DNA of 64,000 nucleotides from Camelus dromedarius (taxonomy: Eukaryota), in NCBI RefSeq assembly GCF_036321535.1, contig NC_087444.1:37200001-37264000 (forward strand), in the 5' to 3' direction. Below the pieces are notes generated by a model. It was given only the letters and a program-made list of their open reading frames with translations, was not told the DNA's origin and made no database searches. A program made the translations under genes and the position numbers. This document shows positions 1 to 15,549 of the stretch, one piece after another. Each line of letters starts with the position of its first letter. Position 1 is the stretch's first letter.

Positions 1-700
1 ATAACAAGCGTTGGCAAGGATGCAGAGTAACTGAAATCCTCATACACTGCTGGGGGGAATGGAAAATGGTGCAGTTACTTTGGAAAATAGTTTGGCAGTT
101 CCTAAAATGATTAAAAACATAGAGTTACTATATGACCCAGTAATTCCATTCCTAAGTATATAACCAAGAGAAATTGTCATATATTTGCACAAAAACTGGT
201 ACATGAGTGTTTATAGTAGGATAATCCATAATGGCCAAGAAGGTAGAAACAACCCAACTGTCTAGCAATGGATGGTTGGATAAACAGAATGTGGTGTATC
301 CATACAGTAGACTATCCAGCCATAAAAAAGAATGAAGTAGTGATACATGCTACACCATGGATGAACCTTGAAAACATTATGCTAGGTAAAAGAAGTCAGA
401 CACCAAAAACCATATATTGTATGATTCTATTTATATGAAATGTCCAGAATAGGCAAATCCATAGATTTCACAGAAAGTAGATCAGAGACAGAAAGTAGAT
501 TCCTGATTGCCAGGGGCTGGGGGGAGGGGGAATGAGAAGTGACAGCTAATGGGTACAGACTTCTTTTTAGGGTAATGCAAATGTCCTGGAAGAAGATAGT
601 GGGATAATTGTGCAACTTTGTGAGTATACTCAAAACCACTGAATTGTACTCTTAAAAGGGTAAATTTTATGGTATGCAAATTATATCTCAATAAAGTTGA
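1..700 (+). mobile_element. Old LINE-1 3' fragment (L1M-type), in a CES3 intron or the downstream part of that locus
   Basis: Typical L1 ORF2-end/3'UTR text (gcaaggatgcagag...ctcatacactgctgg; aaaaagaatgaagta; gaaccttgaaaacattatgct), ending in AATAAA at about 690. Subfamily not determinable by eye. Confidence 0.85.
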
Positions 701-1180
701 TATTTCTAAAATTATGGTCTGCAAATGCTGGTATAGTTGCAATCAAACCTATAGAATCAAGTTGCTGGCAGCAGTTTAAATTGGCAGAGCAATTTCAGAA
801 AGTGTTATGCCAAAGGCAATACGTAAGAAGTGGAGAGGTCTCCACGAGCGGTATGAATTACTTTCCATGGCTAATGCTTTCACCAAGGATATTTAGTAGA
901 AATCTGGTTGGCTGAACAATTTACAGTTTTGTTCTTGGAGAACAAGGCGGGTGGAGGGAACATCTGCTCCAGCTGTAGGGTGGGCAGCACTCAATTCAAG
1001 AGAAGCATCTTTGGCTACAAAGTCCTGGACATAGCACTCCACACTAGGCAGGTTTGCCCAGGTCTTGGGTACCAGCAAGGTTGGCTCTCTTTTACACTCA
1101 CAACTCCAAGTTGACAGTATCAGGGTGAGGCTGCCTATCAGAGTCCAGGGCAGTGTTTCCCCTTAACACTCTTCTGCCAT

Positions 1181-1186
1181 CACACA

Positions 1187-1247
<61 letters not shown>
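1181..1247. repeat. (CA)n microsatellite
   Basis: About 33 CA units with one interruption; produces the spurious VCVC ORF at 1098..1292. Confidence 0.98.
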
Positions 1248-1250
<3 letters not shown>

Positions 1251-1948
1251 ACTGGCCTGGAGACCCCTACAAACTTCATCTTTGAGTATCAAGATTCCTT
1301 GATGCTCTCATCCAGCAAGCATTCAGATGCCCCTCCTGGGGATGAAATCCAAAGGACTAAGTCAGAGGACAAAAGCTGTGGACATGAAGGGGTTCACTGC
1401 ACTAGTAGCTTCAGTGGTAAAAACAAGAAGCTGCCCAAGTGCTGAAATGAAGGAACATTATGATGAGACCCTTTTTTTTGTGGACAGTTTTGCAGTCATT
1501 AAATCAGTTACTGTGAAGCTGGGCAGAGTGAGAATGATAGAACAGGATGCTCAGAAGGAAAGTGCAATGCTGATGCTCTGTGTGGGGAGTTCAGTGCGCT
1601 GGAAGGCACTTGGGCTGTGACTTGCTGTCTGAAACCTGAGAGTCTTTGATGGTTAGTCTCTCAGGCAGAGTCACGCTAACCAGTCTCATAGAGCCTGATG
1701 TATCAACTAGGAACCAAAGCAGGAGTATGCCGTGGATCGACACTGCCTAGAAAGTGCAAAGATTTGGTTCTCAGGAAGGAAACATTTGCTTTCAGAAAAT
1801 TAAGCTGGGTAACCTTGAGCAAGTCCCTTAAACCTCTCAAACTCAGCTTTCTCACCTATCAAACGGAAGTGCTCAGCTTACAGGCTGTGGGAATGGTACT
1901 GGGGCAGGAGAGCACTGTCTAGGGCAGGGCATTGAAGGGCACACTCAC

Positions 1949-4900
1949 CTTGGGGATGAGCCAGCCAAACTTGTGATCGTTGACACCCAGGAGGAAGGGC
2001 ACAGAGTGGAGCTGCCTCTCCCTCAGGAGCTCATTGGGGGTCTTGGGAAAGAAGGTGCTGTCAATGGTGTAGAAAGCTGTACCCTTTTGCAGGAGAAAGC
2101 AAGTCAGAGGGCCTCCCAGTCAGGATCAAGCCTCAAAATATGGGACCCCAAAGGTCACTTGGCTGCATGTCTGAGTGGCTAAACCTTGAGGAAAGGGAGG
2201 GGATGAGGTCACTAGGGCGAGAGGACCAGTGAGGGTCGGGAGACCAGACAAGCGATGCTTCTGAGCAGTCCTCTTCCTTAGAAGACAGGCCTGCCCTTGA
2301 GGCTGGGGCAGCCCTGCCTTCATGGCGCCGGGCCTAGTTGGGCCCTCAGCCACTACCTCTCAGAGGTGGCTACCTTAAGCCTCACCCCGGACTGCAAATT
2401 GCTCTCTGCTCCCACAGGAACTGGACAGGACCCCTTCTGTGCCACTGCCCACCACTGTCCCCTAAGAGGTGGGTTTACCAACTTCTCTGCAAGCATCAGT
2501 TCCTTGCTTGACTTCTGCCGAAGGCACTGCAACATCTCAGCCAAGGAGTTAGAGCCACAGGCCAAGGAGCTGGCAAAGCTCTGGGGACAGACAAGAGTGT
2601 CTTGCCTCTCTCTCTCATCCATCATTGCCCACCTTCCAGCCCCCTGCCTCCCATAGAGAGGAGATGCATCCATAGGAGGGCTGGGGTGACGATGTTAGAG
2701 ATGGGACCTTGACACTAGCCAGACACCTGCCACCAACCCAGAGAAGCCTTCCTTGCTCACCAGCCTGGGTGGTCCCCAAGCAGCCTTTGTGTCCCCCATT
2801 ACATCATACTGTCATTATCTGTATGTGTGTTTAGGTCTCCTTTACCCTTCTGAGGAAAGTGTTATTACCAAGTTAACTCTATTCTCAGAGCCAGTGGGAT
2901 CAGTAAAGATTTGTGGAGTGAATAAGGAAATGAGATATAGTTTAGATGGGGAGGGATTCCAGCATGGGCTACTCTGGTAGGGAGGGAATGGGGGTCAGTG
3001 CTGAGGCTGGAAGCAGATCAGGGAGTCAGTAGGAAGCGAGGCTGAAGGGATAATTTCTTGGATCATGTCATACCTGGTGGCACTGATGGTTTTCTCTGAG
3101 TTCTCACAGGTTGTGTGCTTCCTTCATCCTAGTTGGTCCCTCTCTGCCAACAAGAAGCTCTCTACTGGTAAGACCTCCACTCTGGGACTCCAGGGCAAAC
3201 ACAGGGTGGGATGTGGCAGGTACAAATGGGGTAAGAGAGTGAAAGAAATGCAGACCTGAGCCAGGGGCCAGGGGTCAGAACTCAGAAATCCTGGTAAGGT
3301 GATGATTCCACTCTGTGCTATAGCTCTGTGGAACAGCCCTGCAGCCAGTGGGGACAGGACCTGGGTGCAATGTAGAGGACAGATGGCCGTCAGAAGAGGG
3401 CAGAAGATCTGGGAGGTCTGGGGCCACAGGAGACACCATCACTAGCCCCTTTGGTGACTCACCAGGGCAGAGACGATGCAGGCACCAGCAGATCCACCAA
3501 AGATGGTGACAGAGTTGAAGTCACCTCCAAAGGGGGTGATGTTCCCCTGCACCCAGCGCAGAGCAGCCACTACATCAAGGAAGCCCCAGTTGCCAGGGGC
3601 GTGCTTGTCCCCAGTGCTGGGGGTAGAGTGGGGCAGTGGTTAGGGTGGGCTGGCTCCCCTGACAAACTTTCTTCAGCCTTTGCAGGTTTGCTTTGAGCCA
3701 GCCACTAGGATGCCAGACTTTCTCCTGCTCCCCAAGTCTGGCCTGGCTATGAACCACACTTGGTATTCATATACCCAGCACGTGGAATGGGAGGGCCTGG
3801 CTAGGCCAACTGCCAGCTCTGGCTCTTAAGTGCTTGCTAAAGCTCTTTGTTCCTTGACCCCCATGCCCTGCTGGCCCCAGACCAGAAGCCAACACTTTCT
3901 TCCCAAAGGACAAAGTCCACTGAAAACTGCTGGCTTTGGTTGAGCCCCTCCCTCAGGGTGGAGCCTGGGGAAGCACCCTTCTCTGCCTCAGATATCCTGC
4001 TGGCCCAGGAGATCTTCCTTCAAGCTCCAGACCCTCACTCTAGATCCCCAGCTCCTCTCACGAGCTGGCCTCTCCTCAGTGCAGTCAATATCCTCTGCCA
4101 GGACTGCCACCTCACCTGAAGAAGCCAGGGATCCCCAGCCGGTATTGGACTGTGACCACTACCATATCCCCGTAGGCGGCCAGGGCTGAGCCATCGTGGG
4201 AAGTGGCGGCGCCAACCACGAAAGAGCCCCCATGGATCCATGCCATGACCTGCAGAGATGGCCACGGGTCAGTGACACCCCCCAGCCTATCAGGGCAGGT
4301 CATTCATGGGACCCCCGGAGTGGTTTCAGAGCAGGGATGGCAAGGTGGCAGGCCAGGCGGAGTGGGCTGGATGGACAGGGCCCTCTGGGCTGCACACCGG
4401 CCTCCCAGCCCCTGAGGTGGCCTCAGCTGGGCTGTAGATGTTGAGGATCAGGCAGTCCTCCGAAATCGGAAAGAGCTGGTGTTTTCCGTCCAGCGTAAAT
4501 CGGCTGTTGTTCATTCTCTCCACATCCTGTAGGCACCTGTGGCTGGGGAGGAGCCCGAGGGCCAATAGGTCAGCCCCACAAACCCCAGCAGCTGGACTCC
4601 CACTACTTGCTAGCTTGCCCGCCTCCACCGGGGCTCCTTACATTGCAGGGACCGTGCTGGCATCCCGCACACCCTCCCAGGACGGCGCTGGGCGTGGGGC
4701 AGAGAACTGGCTGGGCCCCAAGGGTGGCTGGGTGAACGGGATGCCCAGGAAGACATTCATGAGCCGGTCTGTGCCCTTCACACCCACCTGCCGGCTCCGC
4801 ACGCTGCCAAGGGTGGTGTCCACTTCAGGCTGAGTGATCCCTGGTCCTGAGGGCAGGACAGAGGGGCTGTGGGTGAGTGGCAGCTTCCACGAGAGGATGG

Positions 4901-5478
4901 GTGGCAGACGGAGTCACTAAAATGTTTGCTCTCTGAGCACCTCTGCCACGCCCTGTTCTGAGCCCTTAGGTGAACTTCCCCAGGCTGCCTGTGAGATGGT
5001 CTTTGTGATTACCCACCACTTCCTCCTCCCTACCCTGCATCACCACCTTTCTCCTCCAGGCCAAACTATTACTTAGAGTAAAGGAACCAAGCTCTTCTGG
5101 AACTCACAGACCTGTGGGGTGGGGGATGGGGAGTGGGCTCAGGCCTTGGGCCAGGCACTCACCCTCTCTGAACCTCAGATAGCTCACACACACACACACA
5201 CACCAGCCTGTGAGGACAGAGCCCCCGCCCAGAGAGGACATACAACCCCTGGCATTCCTCCGAATGAATGGAGGGCTCCTTCCCTGGGCAGGCTGCCCAC
5301 CCTTTCCTGTCCCTACCTCACTCTTGCCCCCTCCCCTCAAATCCTCCCACAAACCCAGAAGCTCCCACCTCTGGAGGCCCTGCAGGGGTGTCTTACCAGC
5401 GGCTGTAGCAGAGAATGGCAGGAGTAGACAGGCCACCCAGACCAGGACCCTGGACCCAGTTCTTACTGCTGCCTCCAT
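1949..5478 (-). CDS. CES3: Carboxylesterase 3, coding exons 1-8 (later exons not found in the window); probably catalytically impaired
   Basis: Exons (minus): 5478-5397, 4846-4642, 4536-4398, 4249-4116, 3616-3463, 3360-3256, 2580-2479, 2086/2083-1949; phases compatible. Signal peptide [34 protein letters not shown] oxyanion motif, GGSAG nucleophile. The acid position reads GVNDHKFGW instead of GVNNHEFSW, and the exon 8 acceptor is ctcctgcAA. Confidence 0.93.
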
Positions 5479-6316
5479 GCTCCTTGCTCACAACTGGCTG
5501 CTGGCGGAAGTGGCAGAAGGTGGAATAAGATAAAATCCCTGCCCTTTGGCACAACCAGTCTCTAAAGGGCTGCTAGGAAAACCTCAGCCTCCAGCCCCAG
5601 CTGGCTGGTGGCAGCCCTAAGAACAAGCATCTAGTGCCCAGACTTGGGGAGGGGGGAGGTGGGGCAGGGAGAGTGCCCTGCAGGGGCCTGGGTGACATGC
5701 CAGCCCAGGGCTCTGCAGCTCCAGGTTCAAGTTCCAGTCTCCTGACTCCATGACTTCTATGAGATCTTGTACACTCATTGCAAAATACACATATCACCCA
5801 CCTGAGGAAGTGGTGGCCATGACCCCAGTCAGGCCTGAGGTGGGGGTTGGTGTCTAGTCCTGCCTGCCAGGAGGTGTGTCTGAGCCCTGATGCAGGGTGG
5901 AGGGAACTGAAGTTGATACTATTTTTTTTTAAATTGAGGTTAAATTCACATAACATACAACTGACCATTATAAAGTATACAGTTCAGTGGCATTTAGTGT
6001 ATTTGCAATTTTGTGCAACTACCATATTGCTCTAGTTACAAAATACTTTCATTACCCCAGCAAAACACCCTGTACCCATTAATTAGTTACTTGCTGTTCC
6101 TACCCCTGCCCCTTACCTACCATGCCTCTCCCCACCTCCCCTGATAACCTGATAATCATTAATAAACTTTCTGCCTCTATAGATATACCTATTCTGGATA
6201 TGTCACATAAAAGCAATCATATAATATGTGAGCTTTTGTGTCTGTTTTCTTTCACTTAGCAGCATGTTTTTATGGTTCATCCAAGTTGTAGCACTTATCA
6301 GTACTTTGTTCCTTTT

Positions 6317-12597: not shown

Positions 12598-12858
<261 letters not shown>

Positions 12859-15549
12859 CTAGACCCAGTGTAGTGCAGCCACTTGATCCAGGTAGCCCCA
12901 GTTGCCAGTTGCATGTATGTCTCCAGTGCTGCGAGGGGGCAGGGATGGCGGTCATGGAACGGTCCTGGCTTTGTCAGCCCACACTGCCCAGTCCAGCCCC
13001 AGTCTCACCTGAAGAAGCCCAGCACACCCAGGCGGTACTGGGTAACGACCACTATGACGTCCTCGAAGGCTGCCAGTGCAGACCCATCATACATGGAAGC
13101 CATGCCCATCACAAGCAAGCCACCATGGATCCACACCATCACCTGGAGAATCCAAGGCACAGATACCACGTTGCTCCCACCCAGCCCAAACCCCACCAGG
13201 GATGCTGCTTAGACTAACCACCACCTTGGCTCTGTCTGTCTAACAATGTGGACAAAACTCGATATATTCATGCCCCGGGGCTGAAAGTGACCCAAGTTCC
13301 ATCAGGAAAGCTGGGCCTCCCACACTTTGGGGTCTGTCCCATGTACCAAGGCCTGGCTCCATTTCTCCCAGAACACTCTCTGAGGTGGAAAGAAAAGGGG
13401 TGTCTCCCTGATCACCCCACATGCATATCAATTAAGGAAAGTGTTCTCTATTCTCATTGGCCCGACAGATAATCCCTGGCTGGGGTCTCTGGCCACCTCA
13501 ACGGGCAGCCCTCAGTCACCTGAGTGGGTCTCCTGTGCATGAGTTGGTTAGGTGAGTCCCGGGTCCCTCCCAGGGCCACCGTTTCTGATCTCTGGGAGCA
13601 GCCAGGGTTCTGCAACCCTGTGCCCAGGGGTCAGCCACCCATGCTGGGTAAGAAGGACTCTCTTAGATCTAATAGTAAGAAGCTTCTTAATAGGGTCCAC
13701 ACTGCAGTGGAGCCCAGGCTGATCCTGTCCTTTTTCAATTTTCTTGCAGAAAAAATGTCCTCCCACCCCTTAGCCAGCTGTGACCTGGCACTCACAGGCA
13801 GGTTGGAGCCCTCGTGGGTATGGGCAGGTGTGAAGATGTTGAGGTACAGGCAGTCTTCAGACATGGAGGTGGAAGGCAGGGTCATATTCAATACTTTCAC
13901 AAACATTGCATTCATGCTAGCCGTATCCTGCAGACACCTGGTGGCAGTGGCAGGCAGTCAGTGCTGGAGCCGTGTCATGGCCATAAACAGATCCCACCTA
14001 CCCTTGGTCCCACTTCCCTCGATACCCTGCTCGCACATGGTCCTTTCCTAAAGCCCCTTTGCACCAAGTAAGTTACAGGCCACAGGTTCTGGGGAAGCTG
14101 TCTTCTGGAGAGGCGTCAAGCTTATGAAGTCCTTGGATACCAGTCCTCCTGAGGCTGAGAAATCCTGACTCTTGGGGGTCTCTATGAGAACCATTGGTTG
14201 CATGTGTTGACACTCACCACCATATCACTGTACTCAGATAGGCCTGGAACAGGGAAGTAGCCCATATACATGTGCTGCCAGAATGAATGGATGTTAATTT
14301 CTCACAAGAAGGGGAGTGGGATGTCCCTTGTTCCAAGTCAGACTCTCAAGGAACCTCATCACTCCCATATAGTTTCCAGCTGCAAGAATATATACATGCC
14401 CCTTGGTCAATGGCACCCAGCCCTGTCAGCTGGTGCAGTGACTGTGCAGAGTGGGGGTTCCCCACTCCTCAGGGATCTACTGTATCTGCTGCTACAAGGT
14501 TCACACCTCTCCCAGAGACACCTCCTCTTGGCATAACTAGAACGTGGGGAGATGTGTATCTCTGCTCATCCCTTCAGCATGTGGAGCTAATGCTCTTTGA
14601 GTGTTAAGCCCTCAGCCTGGGAGTTACTCCACCCTTTCAAGGCTCAGCATGCTCATCAGAAAAATGCATGTGGGGATCCATCAAACTCAGAGGGAAAACT
14701 GGCTGTGGGCATTTAGATAAAATGACAATGGTGGCCTGGCCCAGAGCTCTGAGTACCTTCTATCTCCAGGGCCTAGAGTTCCCTGCACTCTCTGCTTACA
14801 TGGCCGGGTGGGAGGTCCCATCCTTTACACCACTCCAAGATTCTGGGGGCTCAGGGGGCACAAATTGCAGAGGCCCCAGAGGTGGCTTGGCAAAGGGAAT
14901 TCCCAGGAAGGTGTGGACCCTCACATCAGTGTTCTTCATGTGGACGAGACTCCCTCGCACTTGCCCTGTGTGTGTCATCCGGACAGGGCTGGTAGAGTCC
15001 TGGCCTGTGCGCAGAGAGATGGATATCAGGGTTAGGTCTCCCCCATCAGCTGCCCTCCCCAACTGTTGATATGGCTACCTCCTTCCTGTCCTCAGCTCAG
15101 TTCAAGGGACACAGGTGTACCAACATTTGCTTTGCAGATTTCCTTCCTGTATCTCTGCCCTGACCCTTGCCACTGCCTTCACTGAAAGGTGCCAGCCTTT
15201 CCCACCACACTCAGTGAGGCTCCCTGGGGCTTTGCCCCATGGTTTAGCGCCAGGAGCTTCAAACAAACAGCCACATGAGCTTGATGGGAGAGTGTCCTTT
15301 CCACTCACCGTGTGCCAGGTCCTAGGAGGCAGTAGGAGAACTGTGGGAACAGGACAGACAAGGTTCCTGCCCTTAAGGATCTCACACTCTAGGTGGAAAG
15401 AAATGACAGAGAGAGAGTATCCTCCAGAAAGTGATGTTATGAAGAGAACTACAAGGTGAAGTGCAGGTGAGTCTAGAATGTGAACAGTACAGCCCGCCCT
15501 GCTGTGGGGATCAGGGAGGCCTGAAGAGGCTGCACGTCACCTCACAGAG

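What the first reader, a model, noticed from the sequence alone, without database searches (positions are those of the whole stretch)
1970..1972. CES3 catalytic-triad glutamate is replaced by lysine (E-to-K at about residue 346)
Seen: exon 8 reads GTC AAC GAT CAC AAG TTT GGC TGG (V-N-D-H-K-F-G-W). Established: in CES1/2/3 the acid of the Ser-Glu-His triad is the E of this N-x-x-E-F/Y-x-W motif, and the neighbouring CES2 keeps it (NNDEY). Inference: a GAG-to-AAG change reverses the charge and should cripple catalysis, making CES3 a pseudo-enzyme or a decaying gene. The new Asp two residues upstream (N-D-H-K versus N-N-H-E) could be a compensating acid, which would be more unusual still.
Basis: partly seen in the sequence, partly recalled or inferred. 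Interest (0 to 1): 0.8.

Follow-up and report, generated by a model that had tools for sequence, protein, structure and literature searches.

The report
Camel CES3 pseudogene: triad Glu-to-Lys
The lysine replacing the catalytic glutamate is real and shared by Old World camels, but it lies in a carboxylesterase-3 gene that also has a premature stop codon and evolves neutrally, so it is one scar of an already published gene loss, not a rewired enzyme.

Summary
Observation confirmed. Window 1972-1970 (minus strand) reads AAG (Lys) in exon 8 of CES3, in V-N-D-H-K-F-G-W. The Lys aligns with the triad acid Glu354 of human CES1. Of 340 carboxylesterase domains collected here, 336 have Glu at that position.

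It is not a consensus error. The same AAG is in a second dromedary assembly and in Camelus ferus. Alpaca, cattle and horse have GAG. The window is a dromedary, not an alpaca or llama.

In both Camelus loci the rest of CES3, which lies beyond the window's start, carries R404* in exon 10 (CGA to TGA), upstream of the catalytic His458. It also carries a 9-bp in-frame deletion in exon 11. Alpaca CES3 is intact (13 exons, 569 aa). A branch codon model gives omega 1.39 for Camelus against 0.37 for the background (p=0.015), and 1.39 is not different from 1.

The "compensating Asp" idea is refuted. Alpaca already has Asp343 together with Glu345.

CES3 inactivation in all three Old World camels is published (PMC12127551). 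That paper does not mention the triad substitution, which is a small added detail. Interest is low.

The parts
1970..1972 (-). Codon 345 of CES3, AAG (Lys), at the position of the catalytic-triad Glu. The ancestral codon was GAG. The G-to-A change lies in a CpG (CAC|GAG).
1976..1978 (-). Codon 343, GAT (Asp), two residues upstream. It is shared with alpaca, which keeps Glu345. It is ancestral to camelids and not compensatory.
1949..2083 (-). CES3 exon 8 (135 nt). The acceptor has shifted 3 nt (cag to caa, with a new aag). This shift is shared by alpaca and both camels.
2479..2580 (-). CES3 exon 7 (102 nt).
3256..3360 (-). CES3 exon 6 (105 nt).
3463..3616 (-). CES3 exon 5 (154 nt). It holds the nucleophile Ser229 (TCT, 3492-3490) in G-G-S-A-G.
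4116..4249 (-). CES3 exon 4 (134 nt). It holds the oxyanion-hole motif H-G-G-S.
4398..4536 (-). CES3 exon 3 (139 nt), containing E-D-C-L-I-L-N.
4642..4846 (-). CES3 exon 2 (205 nt).
5397..5478 (-). CES3 exon 1 (82 nt), with the ATG at 5478-5476. Exons 1-8 splice into an open frame of 352 codons. Exons 9-13 lie beyond the window's start.

Best explanation
The window holds the 5' two thirds (exons 1-8) of dromedary CES3, which is a unitary pseudogene of Old World camels. On the Camelus stem, after the split from the llama/alpaca lineage and before the dromedary/Bactrian split, the gene acquired three changes. The first is E345K at the triad acid (GAG to AAG, a CpG transition). The second is R404* in exon 10 (CGA to TGA, also a CpG transition). 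The third is a 9-bp in-frame deletion in exon 11.

Inferred consequences: the stop lies 54 codons upstream of the catalytic His458 and three exon junctions before the last exon. Any product would therefore lack the His and the C-terminal third of the fold, and the mRNA is expected to undergo nonsense-mediated decay. Since constraint was lost, the coding sequence has drifted neutrally; later dromedary-only changes such as G316S in the conserved V/I-D-G are examples. The Lys is therefore a scar, or possibly the first hit, of gene loss. It is not a feature of a working protein. Asp343 is an older, neutral camelid substitution.

Shown here: the sequence states, their sharing among three assemblies, the intact alpaca gene and the dN/dS. 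Inferred: nonsense-mediated decay, absence of protein, and the order of the three lesions.
For:: the window is 99.66% identical to CamDro3 CES3 (L001). TGA replaces CGA at codon 404 in both C. dromedarius (L001:12147-12149) and C. ferus (L003). Both also share AAG at codon 345 and the 9-bp deletion; alpaca CES3 is intact, with 13 exons, canonical splice sites and 569 aa; cattle and horse have the same 13-exon structure; parsimony counts are 4 synonymous and 10 non-synonymous changes on the Camelus stem, 1 and 9 on the camel tips, and 12 and 11 in alpaca. Fisher's exact test gives p=0.036; a two-ratio codon model gives omega 1.39 for Camelus and 0.37 for the background, 2dlnL=5.92, p=0.015; omega=1 is not rejected (p=0.59); the collection searched holds no full-length camel CES3 protein. 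The two camel models (KAB1273074.1 and the 446-aa C. ferus model) skip exon 10. [quoted passage not shown]
Against: Within the window itself exons 1-8 are open, all splice sites are canonical and Ser229 is kept, so the window alone shows no disabling lesion other than E345K. Exon 10 of this particular assembly was not seen; the stop is inferred from another dromedary assembly, from C. ferus and from the paper. The substitution counts are small (24 on camel branches). No expression data were examined.
Confidence: 0.9

Rival explanations
1. Pseudo-enzyme: camels keep a non-catalytic CES3 product, either the 403-residue truncation or an alternatively spliced form. It would bind ligands or partners, and Lys345 would be part of that new role.
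For: Exons 1-8 remain open and all 24 splice sites are kept in both camels. Annotators still produced protein models.
Against: Camelus omega is 1.39 and not different from 1. Nine of ten tip substitutions are non-synonymous. Skipping exon 10 (148 nt) shifts the frame, and no combination of skipped exons 9-12 restores it (exon lengths). The existing models bridge the gap only with non-homologous filler sequence. An open frame of about 1 kb after an estimated several million years of neutrality is not unusual.
Confidence: 0.05
2. Rewired triad: Asp343 takes over as the acid of a Ser-His-Asp triad, so the enzyme stays active despite E345K.
For: Asp lies two residues from the lost Glu. One fish domain in the sample has Asp at the acid position itself.
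Against: Asp343 coexists with Glu345 in alpaca, so it arose before the Lys and not in response to it. His458 lies downstream of the shared stop codon. There is no sign of purifying selection.
Confidence: 0.01
3. Assembly or consensus error: the true codon is GAG.
For: None beyond the a priori possibility of a single-base error.
Against: The same AAG is in three assemblies: the window, CamDro3 (which differs from the window at 5 of 5598 bases) and C. ferus.
Confidence: 0.01

Closest known systems
CES3 inactivation in Old World camels (iScience 2025, PMC12127551)
   Same: Same gene and same lineage. The paper reports an early stop codon shared by C. dromedarius, C. bactrianus and C. ferus. I found R404* in two of these species.
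   Different: The paper's text does not mention the catalytic triad, and none of the passages I read mentions the 9-bp deletion or dN/dS for CES3. I could not see its Figure 4D, so I cannot prove that its stop codon is codon 404.
Mammalian carboxylesterase 3 (CES3; Pfam PF00135 COesterase), e.g. alpaca XP_072824931.1
   Same: Orthologous by position (next to CES2, same strand). Identical 13-exon structure. 94.9% protein identity over exons 1-8. G-G-S-A-G nucleophile motif.
   Different: Lys instead of the triad Glu. Premature stop before the triad His. A 3-codon deletion. Neutral evolution.
Human CES1 (PDB 1MX1 and others), Ser221-Glu354-His468 triad
   Same: The exon 8 peptide aligns without gaps, and the Lys falls on the Glu of Q-E-F-G-W. 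The triad numbering is from established knowledge of human CES1.
   Different: It is a paralogue (about 45% identity in this exon) and an active enzyme.
Dugong CES3 'LOW QUALITY PROTEIN' (P0301)
   Same: It also has Lys at the triad-acid position (G-I-T-N-H-K-M-S-W) and is flagged by the annotator as needing correction.
   Different: An independent lineage. Its lesions were not examined here.

Membership tests
CES3 orthologue (carboxylesterase type B, PF00135) | Sequence matches the COesterase profile | tested here: met
   exons 2, 4 and 5 match PF00135 above the gathering score (56.5, 57 and 77.7 bits). Exons 6 and 8 match below it (19.7 and 22.7 bits), as expected for short pieces.
CES3 orthologue (carboxylesterase type B, PF00135) | Orthology: best match to CES3 of relatives, conserved exon structure, position next to CES2 | tested here: met
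   94.9% identity to alpaca CES3 and about 80% to pig, cattle and horse CES3; 13 exons of the same lengths; a CES2-like gene lies immediately upstream on the same strand.
Active serine carboxylesterase | Ser-Glu-His catalytic triad complete | tested here: not met
   Ser229 is present. Glu345 is replaced by Lys. The His458 codon is present but lies downstream of a stop.
Active serine carboxylesterase | Uninterrupted reading frame | tested here: not met
   TGA at codon 404 in L001 and L003. The exon was not visible for this assembly because it lies outside the window.
Unitary pseudogene | Intact functional orthologue in a close relative | tested here: met
   Alpaca locus L002: the 13 exons translate exactly to the 569-aa RefSeq protein.
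Unitary pseudogene | Disabling mutation shared by descent in the lineage | tested here: met
   R404*, E345K and the 9-bp deletion are identical in C. dromedarius and C. ferus. The paper reports the stop in all three species.
Unitary pseudogene | Relaxed selection (dN/dS near 1) on the lineage | tested here: met
   omega is 1.39 against 0.37, p=0.015, and omega=1 is not rejected. Searches give the supporting counts.
Unitary pseudogene | No second, intact CES3 copy elsewhere in the genome | not testable with these tools
   Only this window and single loci of other assemblies were available. The searches returned no other camel CES3 protein.

The most novel reading that the evidence does not exclude
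E345K, not the stop codon, was the founding lesion. A single CpG transition at a catalytic residue would have silenced camel CES3 first, and the nonsense mutation and deletion followed under neutrality. A weaker variant is that a truncated, Lys-bearing CES3 fragment retains a non-catalytic role. The order of events cannot be resolved with living species, because all three lesions are fixed in all of Camelus.
Probability: 0.3. Interest if true: 0.25.

Novelty: already known. Interest (0 to 1): 0.15.

Why it matters
It matters little beyond annotation. Camel CES3 entries in public databases (UniProt A0A5N4DQ56, the C. ferus RefSeq model) are presented as carboxylic ester hydrolases. They are in fact models patched around a stop codon in a gene that has lost a triad residue, so they should be flagged as a pseudogene.

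For camel pharmacology and lipid biology, loss of CES3 may bear on ester-drug and lipid-ester handling. The adjacent CES2 copy in this window also carries an in-frame stop. The CES3 loss itself is already published.

Tried and rejected
1. The whole-library HMMER search with the 45-aa exon returned mostly fragments and no full-length CES3. It still showed Glu in every true family hit.

2. A profile made of a caecilian esterase plus the window's exons (A2) returned amphibian and reptile proteins and cost one search. Replacing the backbone with platypus CES3 (A4) retrieved the mammalian CES3 set, including alpaca and dromedary.

3. This was rejected: 96.9% identity to alpaca against 99.66% to dromedary.

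4. I considered the exon 8 acceptor shift as a camel-specific lesion. This was rejected because alpaca, whose gene is intact, shares it.

5. I considered rescue by exon skipping. This was rejected on exon lengths (148, 141 after the deletion, 79 and 81 nt; no combination is in frame and keeps His458).

6. Structure prediction to measure an Asp-His distance was not run. The tool returns no coordinates, and the question is settled by the alpaca sequence and the stop codon.

7. No full spliced protein was handed to other tools, because it has no reference. Exon pieces were used instead.

8. The N runs of the window were not read in the other assemblies. Comparisons were limited to window 1-5600.

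Full report
**Observation**

The plus strand at 1961-1984 is the reverse complement of GTC AAC GAT CAC AAG TTT GGC TGG. The gene is therefore on the minus strand, and the Lys codon AAG occupies 1972-1970. The exon runs 2083-1949 (45 codons, AG acceptor, GT donor). A phmmer search of solved structures aligns it without gaps to human CES1. The Lys falls on the Glu of I-N-K-Q-E-F-G-W. By established knowledge of human CES1 that residue is Glu354 of the Ser221-Glu354-His468 triad.

**What the gene is**

Two carboxylesterase genes lie on the minus strand. A CES2-like gene spans 15038-9330, and a second gene starts at 5478. I located eight exons of the second gene:
- 5478-5397
- 4846-4642
- 4536-4398
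- 4249-4116
- 3616-3463
- 3360-3256
- 2580-2479
- 2083-1949

All eight have canonical splice sites. They splice into an open 352-codon frame that matches Pfam COesterase. A profile search seeded with the window's exons retrieved the mammalian CES3 family. The best matches were alpaca CES3 (P0200, 94.9% identity) and a dromedary CES3 model (P0260). Nothing downstream of exon 8 is in the window; exon 9 lies about 4.4 kb further on.

**Which animal**

The CES3 part of the window is 99.66% identical to dromedary assembly GCA_000803125.3 (L001; 5 mismatches in 5598 bases). It is 96.9% identical to alpaca (L002). It shares the dromedary-only residues Met57, Ser316 and Thr322 and has one private change, Thr66. 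It is therefore a dromedary, from a different assembly or individual than L001.

**Is the Lys real, and how rare is it**

AAG is present in the window, in L001 and in Camelus ferus (L003). Alpaca, cattle and horse have GAG. The G-to-A change sits in a CpG (CAC|GAG). The three with Lys are the two camel models and a dugong CES3 flagged LOW QUALITY. A consensus error is excluded, and the position is very strongly conserved.

**The rest of the gene**

I derived the exact 13-exon structure of alpaca CES3; its translation equals the RefSeq protein. I then mapped every exon onto the two camel loci.
- All splice sites are conserved.
- Both camels carry TGA where alpaca, cattle and horse have CGA or CGC at codon 404 in exon 10 (L001:12147-12149). 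This is again a CpG transition.
- Both camels carry the same 9-bp in-frame deletion in exon 11.

The nucleophile Ser229 is kept (window 3492-3490). The triad His458 (A-D-H-G-A-E) lies 54 codons downstream of the stop. Exon 10 is 148 nt long, so skipping it shifts the frame. The two public camel protein models avoid the stop only by replacing exon 10 with unrelated filler (V-V-I-I-I-V-I-T-D-I-D). No full-length camel CES3 protein exists in the collection searched.

**Selection**

I polarised substitutions with cattle and horse.

| Branch | Synonymous | Non-synonymous |
|---|---|---|
| Camelus stem (includes E345K and R404*) | 4 | 10 |
| Two camel tips together | 1 | 9 |
| Alpaca | 12 | 11 |

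Comparing all camel branches with alpaca gives Fisher p=0.036. I also wrote a GY94-F3x4 branch model and ran it on 564 codons, with the stop and the deleted codons excluded. It gives omega 0.37 for the background and 1.39 for the Camelus clade. Two ratios fit better than one (2dlnL 5.92, p=0.015), and omega=1 is not rejected (p=0.59). The counts are small, but every line of evidence points to a loss of constraint.

**The Asp**

Alpaca reads V-N-D-H-E-F-G-W. The Asp therefore arose in the camelid ancestor while the Glu was still in place. Asp at the -2 position occurs in 24 of 340 family domains; 21 of them keep the Glu, and the others are the two camel models and one fish domain with Asp. The Asp is thus not a response to the Lys. 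With the His untranslated there is no triad left to rewire.

**Comparison with what is known**

A 2025 comparative study of all camelids lists CES3 among ten genes inactivated specifically in Old World camels. [quoted passage not shown] Its text does not mention the catalytic triad or CES2, and none of the passages I read mentions the 9-bp deletion. I could not view its figure, so the identity of its stop codon with R404* is likely but not proven. The gene loss is therefore already known. The triad substitution is an additional, unreported detail of it.

**Verdict**

The pseudo-enzyme and compensating-Asp ideas are not. E345K, R404* and the deletion all arose on the Camelus stem, and their order cannot be told from living species. 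On rough external divergence dates (my own knowledge, not tested here) that stem spans about 16 to 4-5 million years ago. Interest is low; the practical use is to correct the annotation of the camel CES3 protein entries.

Noticed in passing
window 12673-12930 (minus strand); stop at about 12861-12859; G-Q-S-A-G at 12810-12796: The neighbouring CES2-like gene has an in-frame stop in the exon that carries the nucleophile (L-H-W-V-*-Q-N-I-A), and its motif reads G-Q-S-A-G instead of G-E-S-A-G. The camel gene-loss paper does not mention CES2. I did not check whether other camels share this or whether another CES2 copy exists.
   Followed up: partly
window 2081-2092; L002:6377-6418; L004 and L005 exon 8 starts: The exon 8 acceptor of CES3 moved 3 nt (ancestral ...ctgcag|A.. 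became ...ctgcaaaag|G..), removing one codon. The shift is shared by alpaca, whose gene is intact, and by both camels. It is an old camelid change and not part of the camel-specific decay.
   Followed up: yes
P0301 (Dugong dugon CES3, LOW QUALITY PROTEIN), residues about 331-339: Dugong CES3 also has Lys at the triad-acid position (G-I-T-N-H-K-M-S-W), and the annotator flags it as corrected. This may be an independent CES3 loss in sirenians with the same Glu-to-Lys replacement (whether it is the same codon change was not checked).
   Followed up: no
P0260 (KAB1273074.1 / UniProt A0A5N4DQ56) and P0270 (C. ferus RefSeq model): The public camel CES3 protein models are artefacts of annotating around the stop. 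They retain intron sequence, skip exons and insert a non-homologous bridge in place of exon 10.
   Followed up: yes
window 4731-4733 (codon 66) and codon 49: Two of the five differences between the window and CamDro3 over 5.6 kb fall in CES3 exon 2. One is non-synonymous (Ala66Thr). This fits a gene that is free to vary within dromedaries.
   Followed up: partly
window 1166-1290 and 5187-5215 (minus strand): Two (GT)n/(CA)n microsatellites lie in CES3 introns. One may account for the single gap between the window and CamDro3 (not checked).
   Followed up: no
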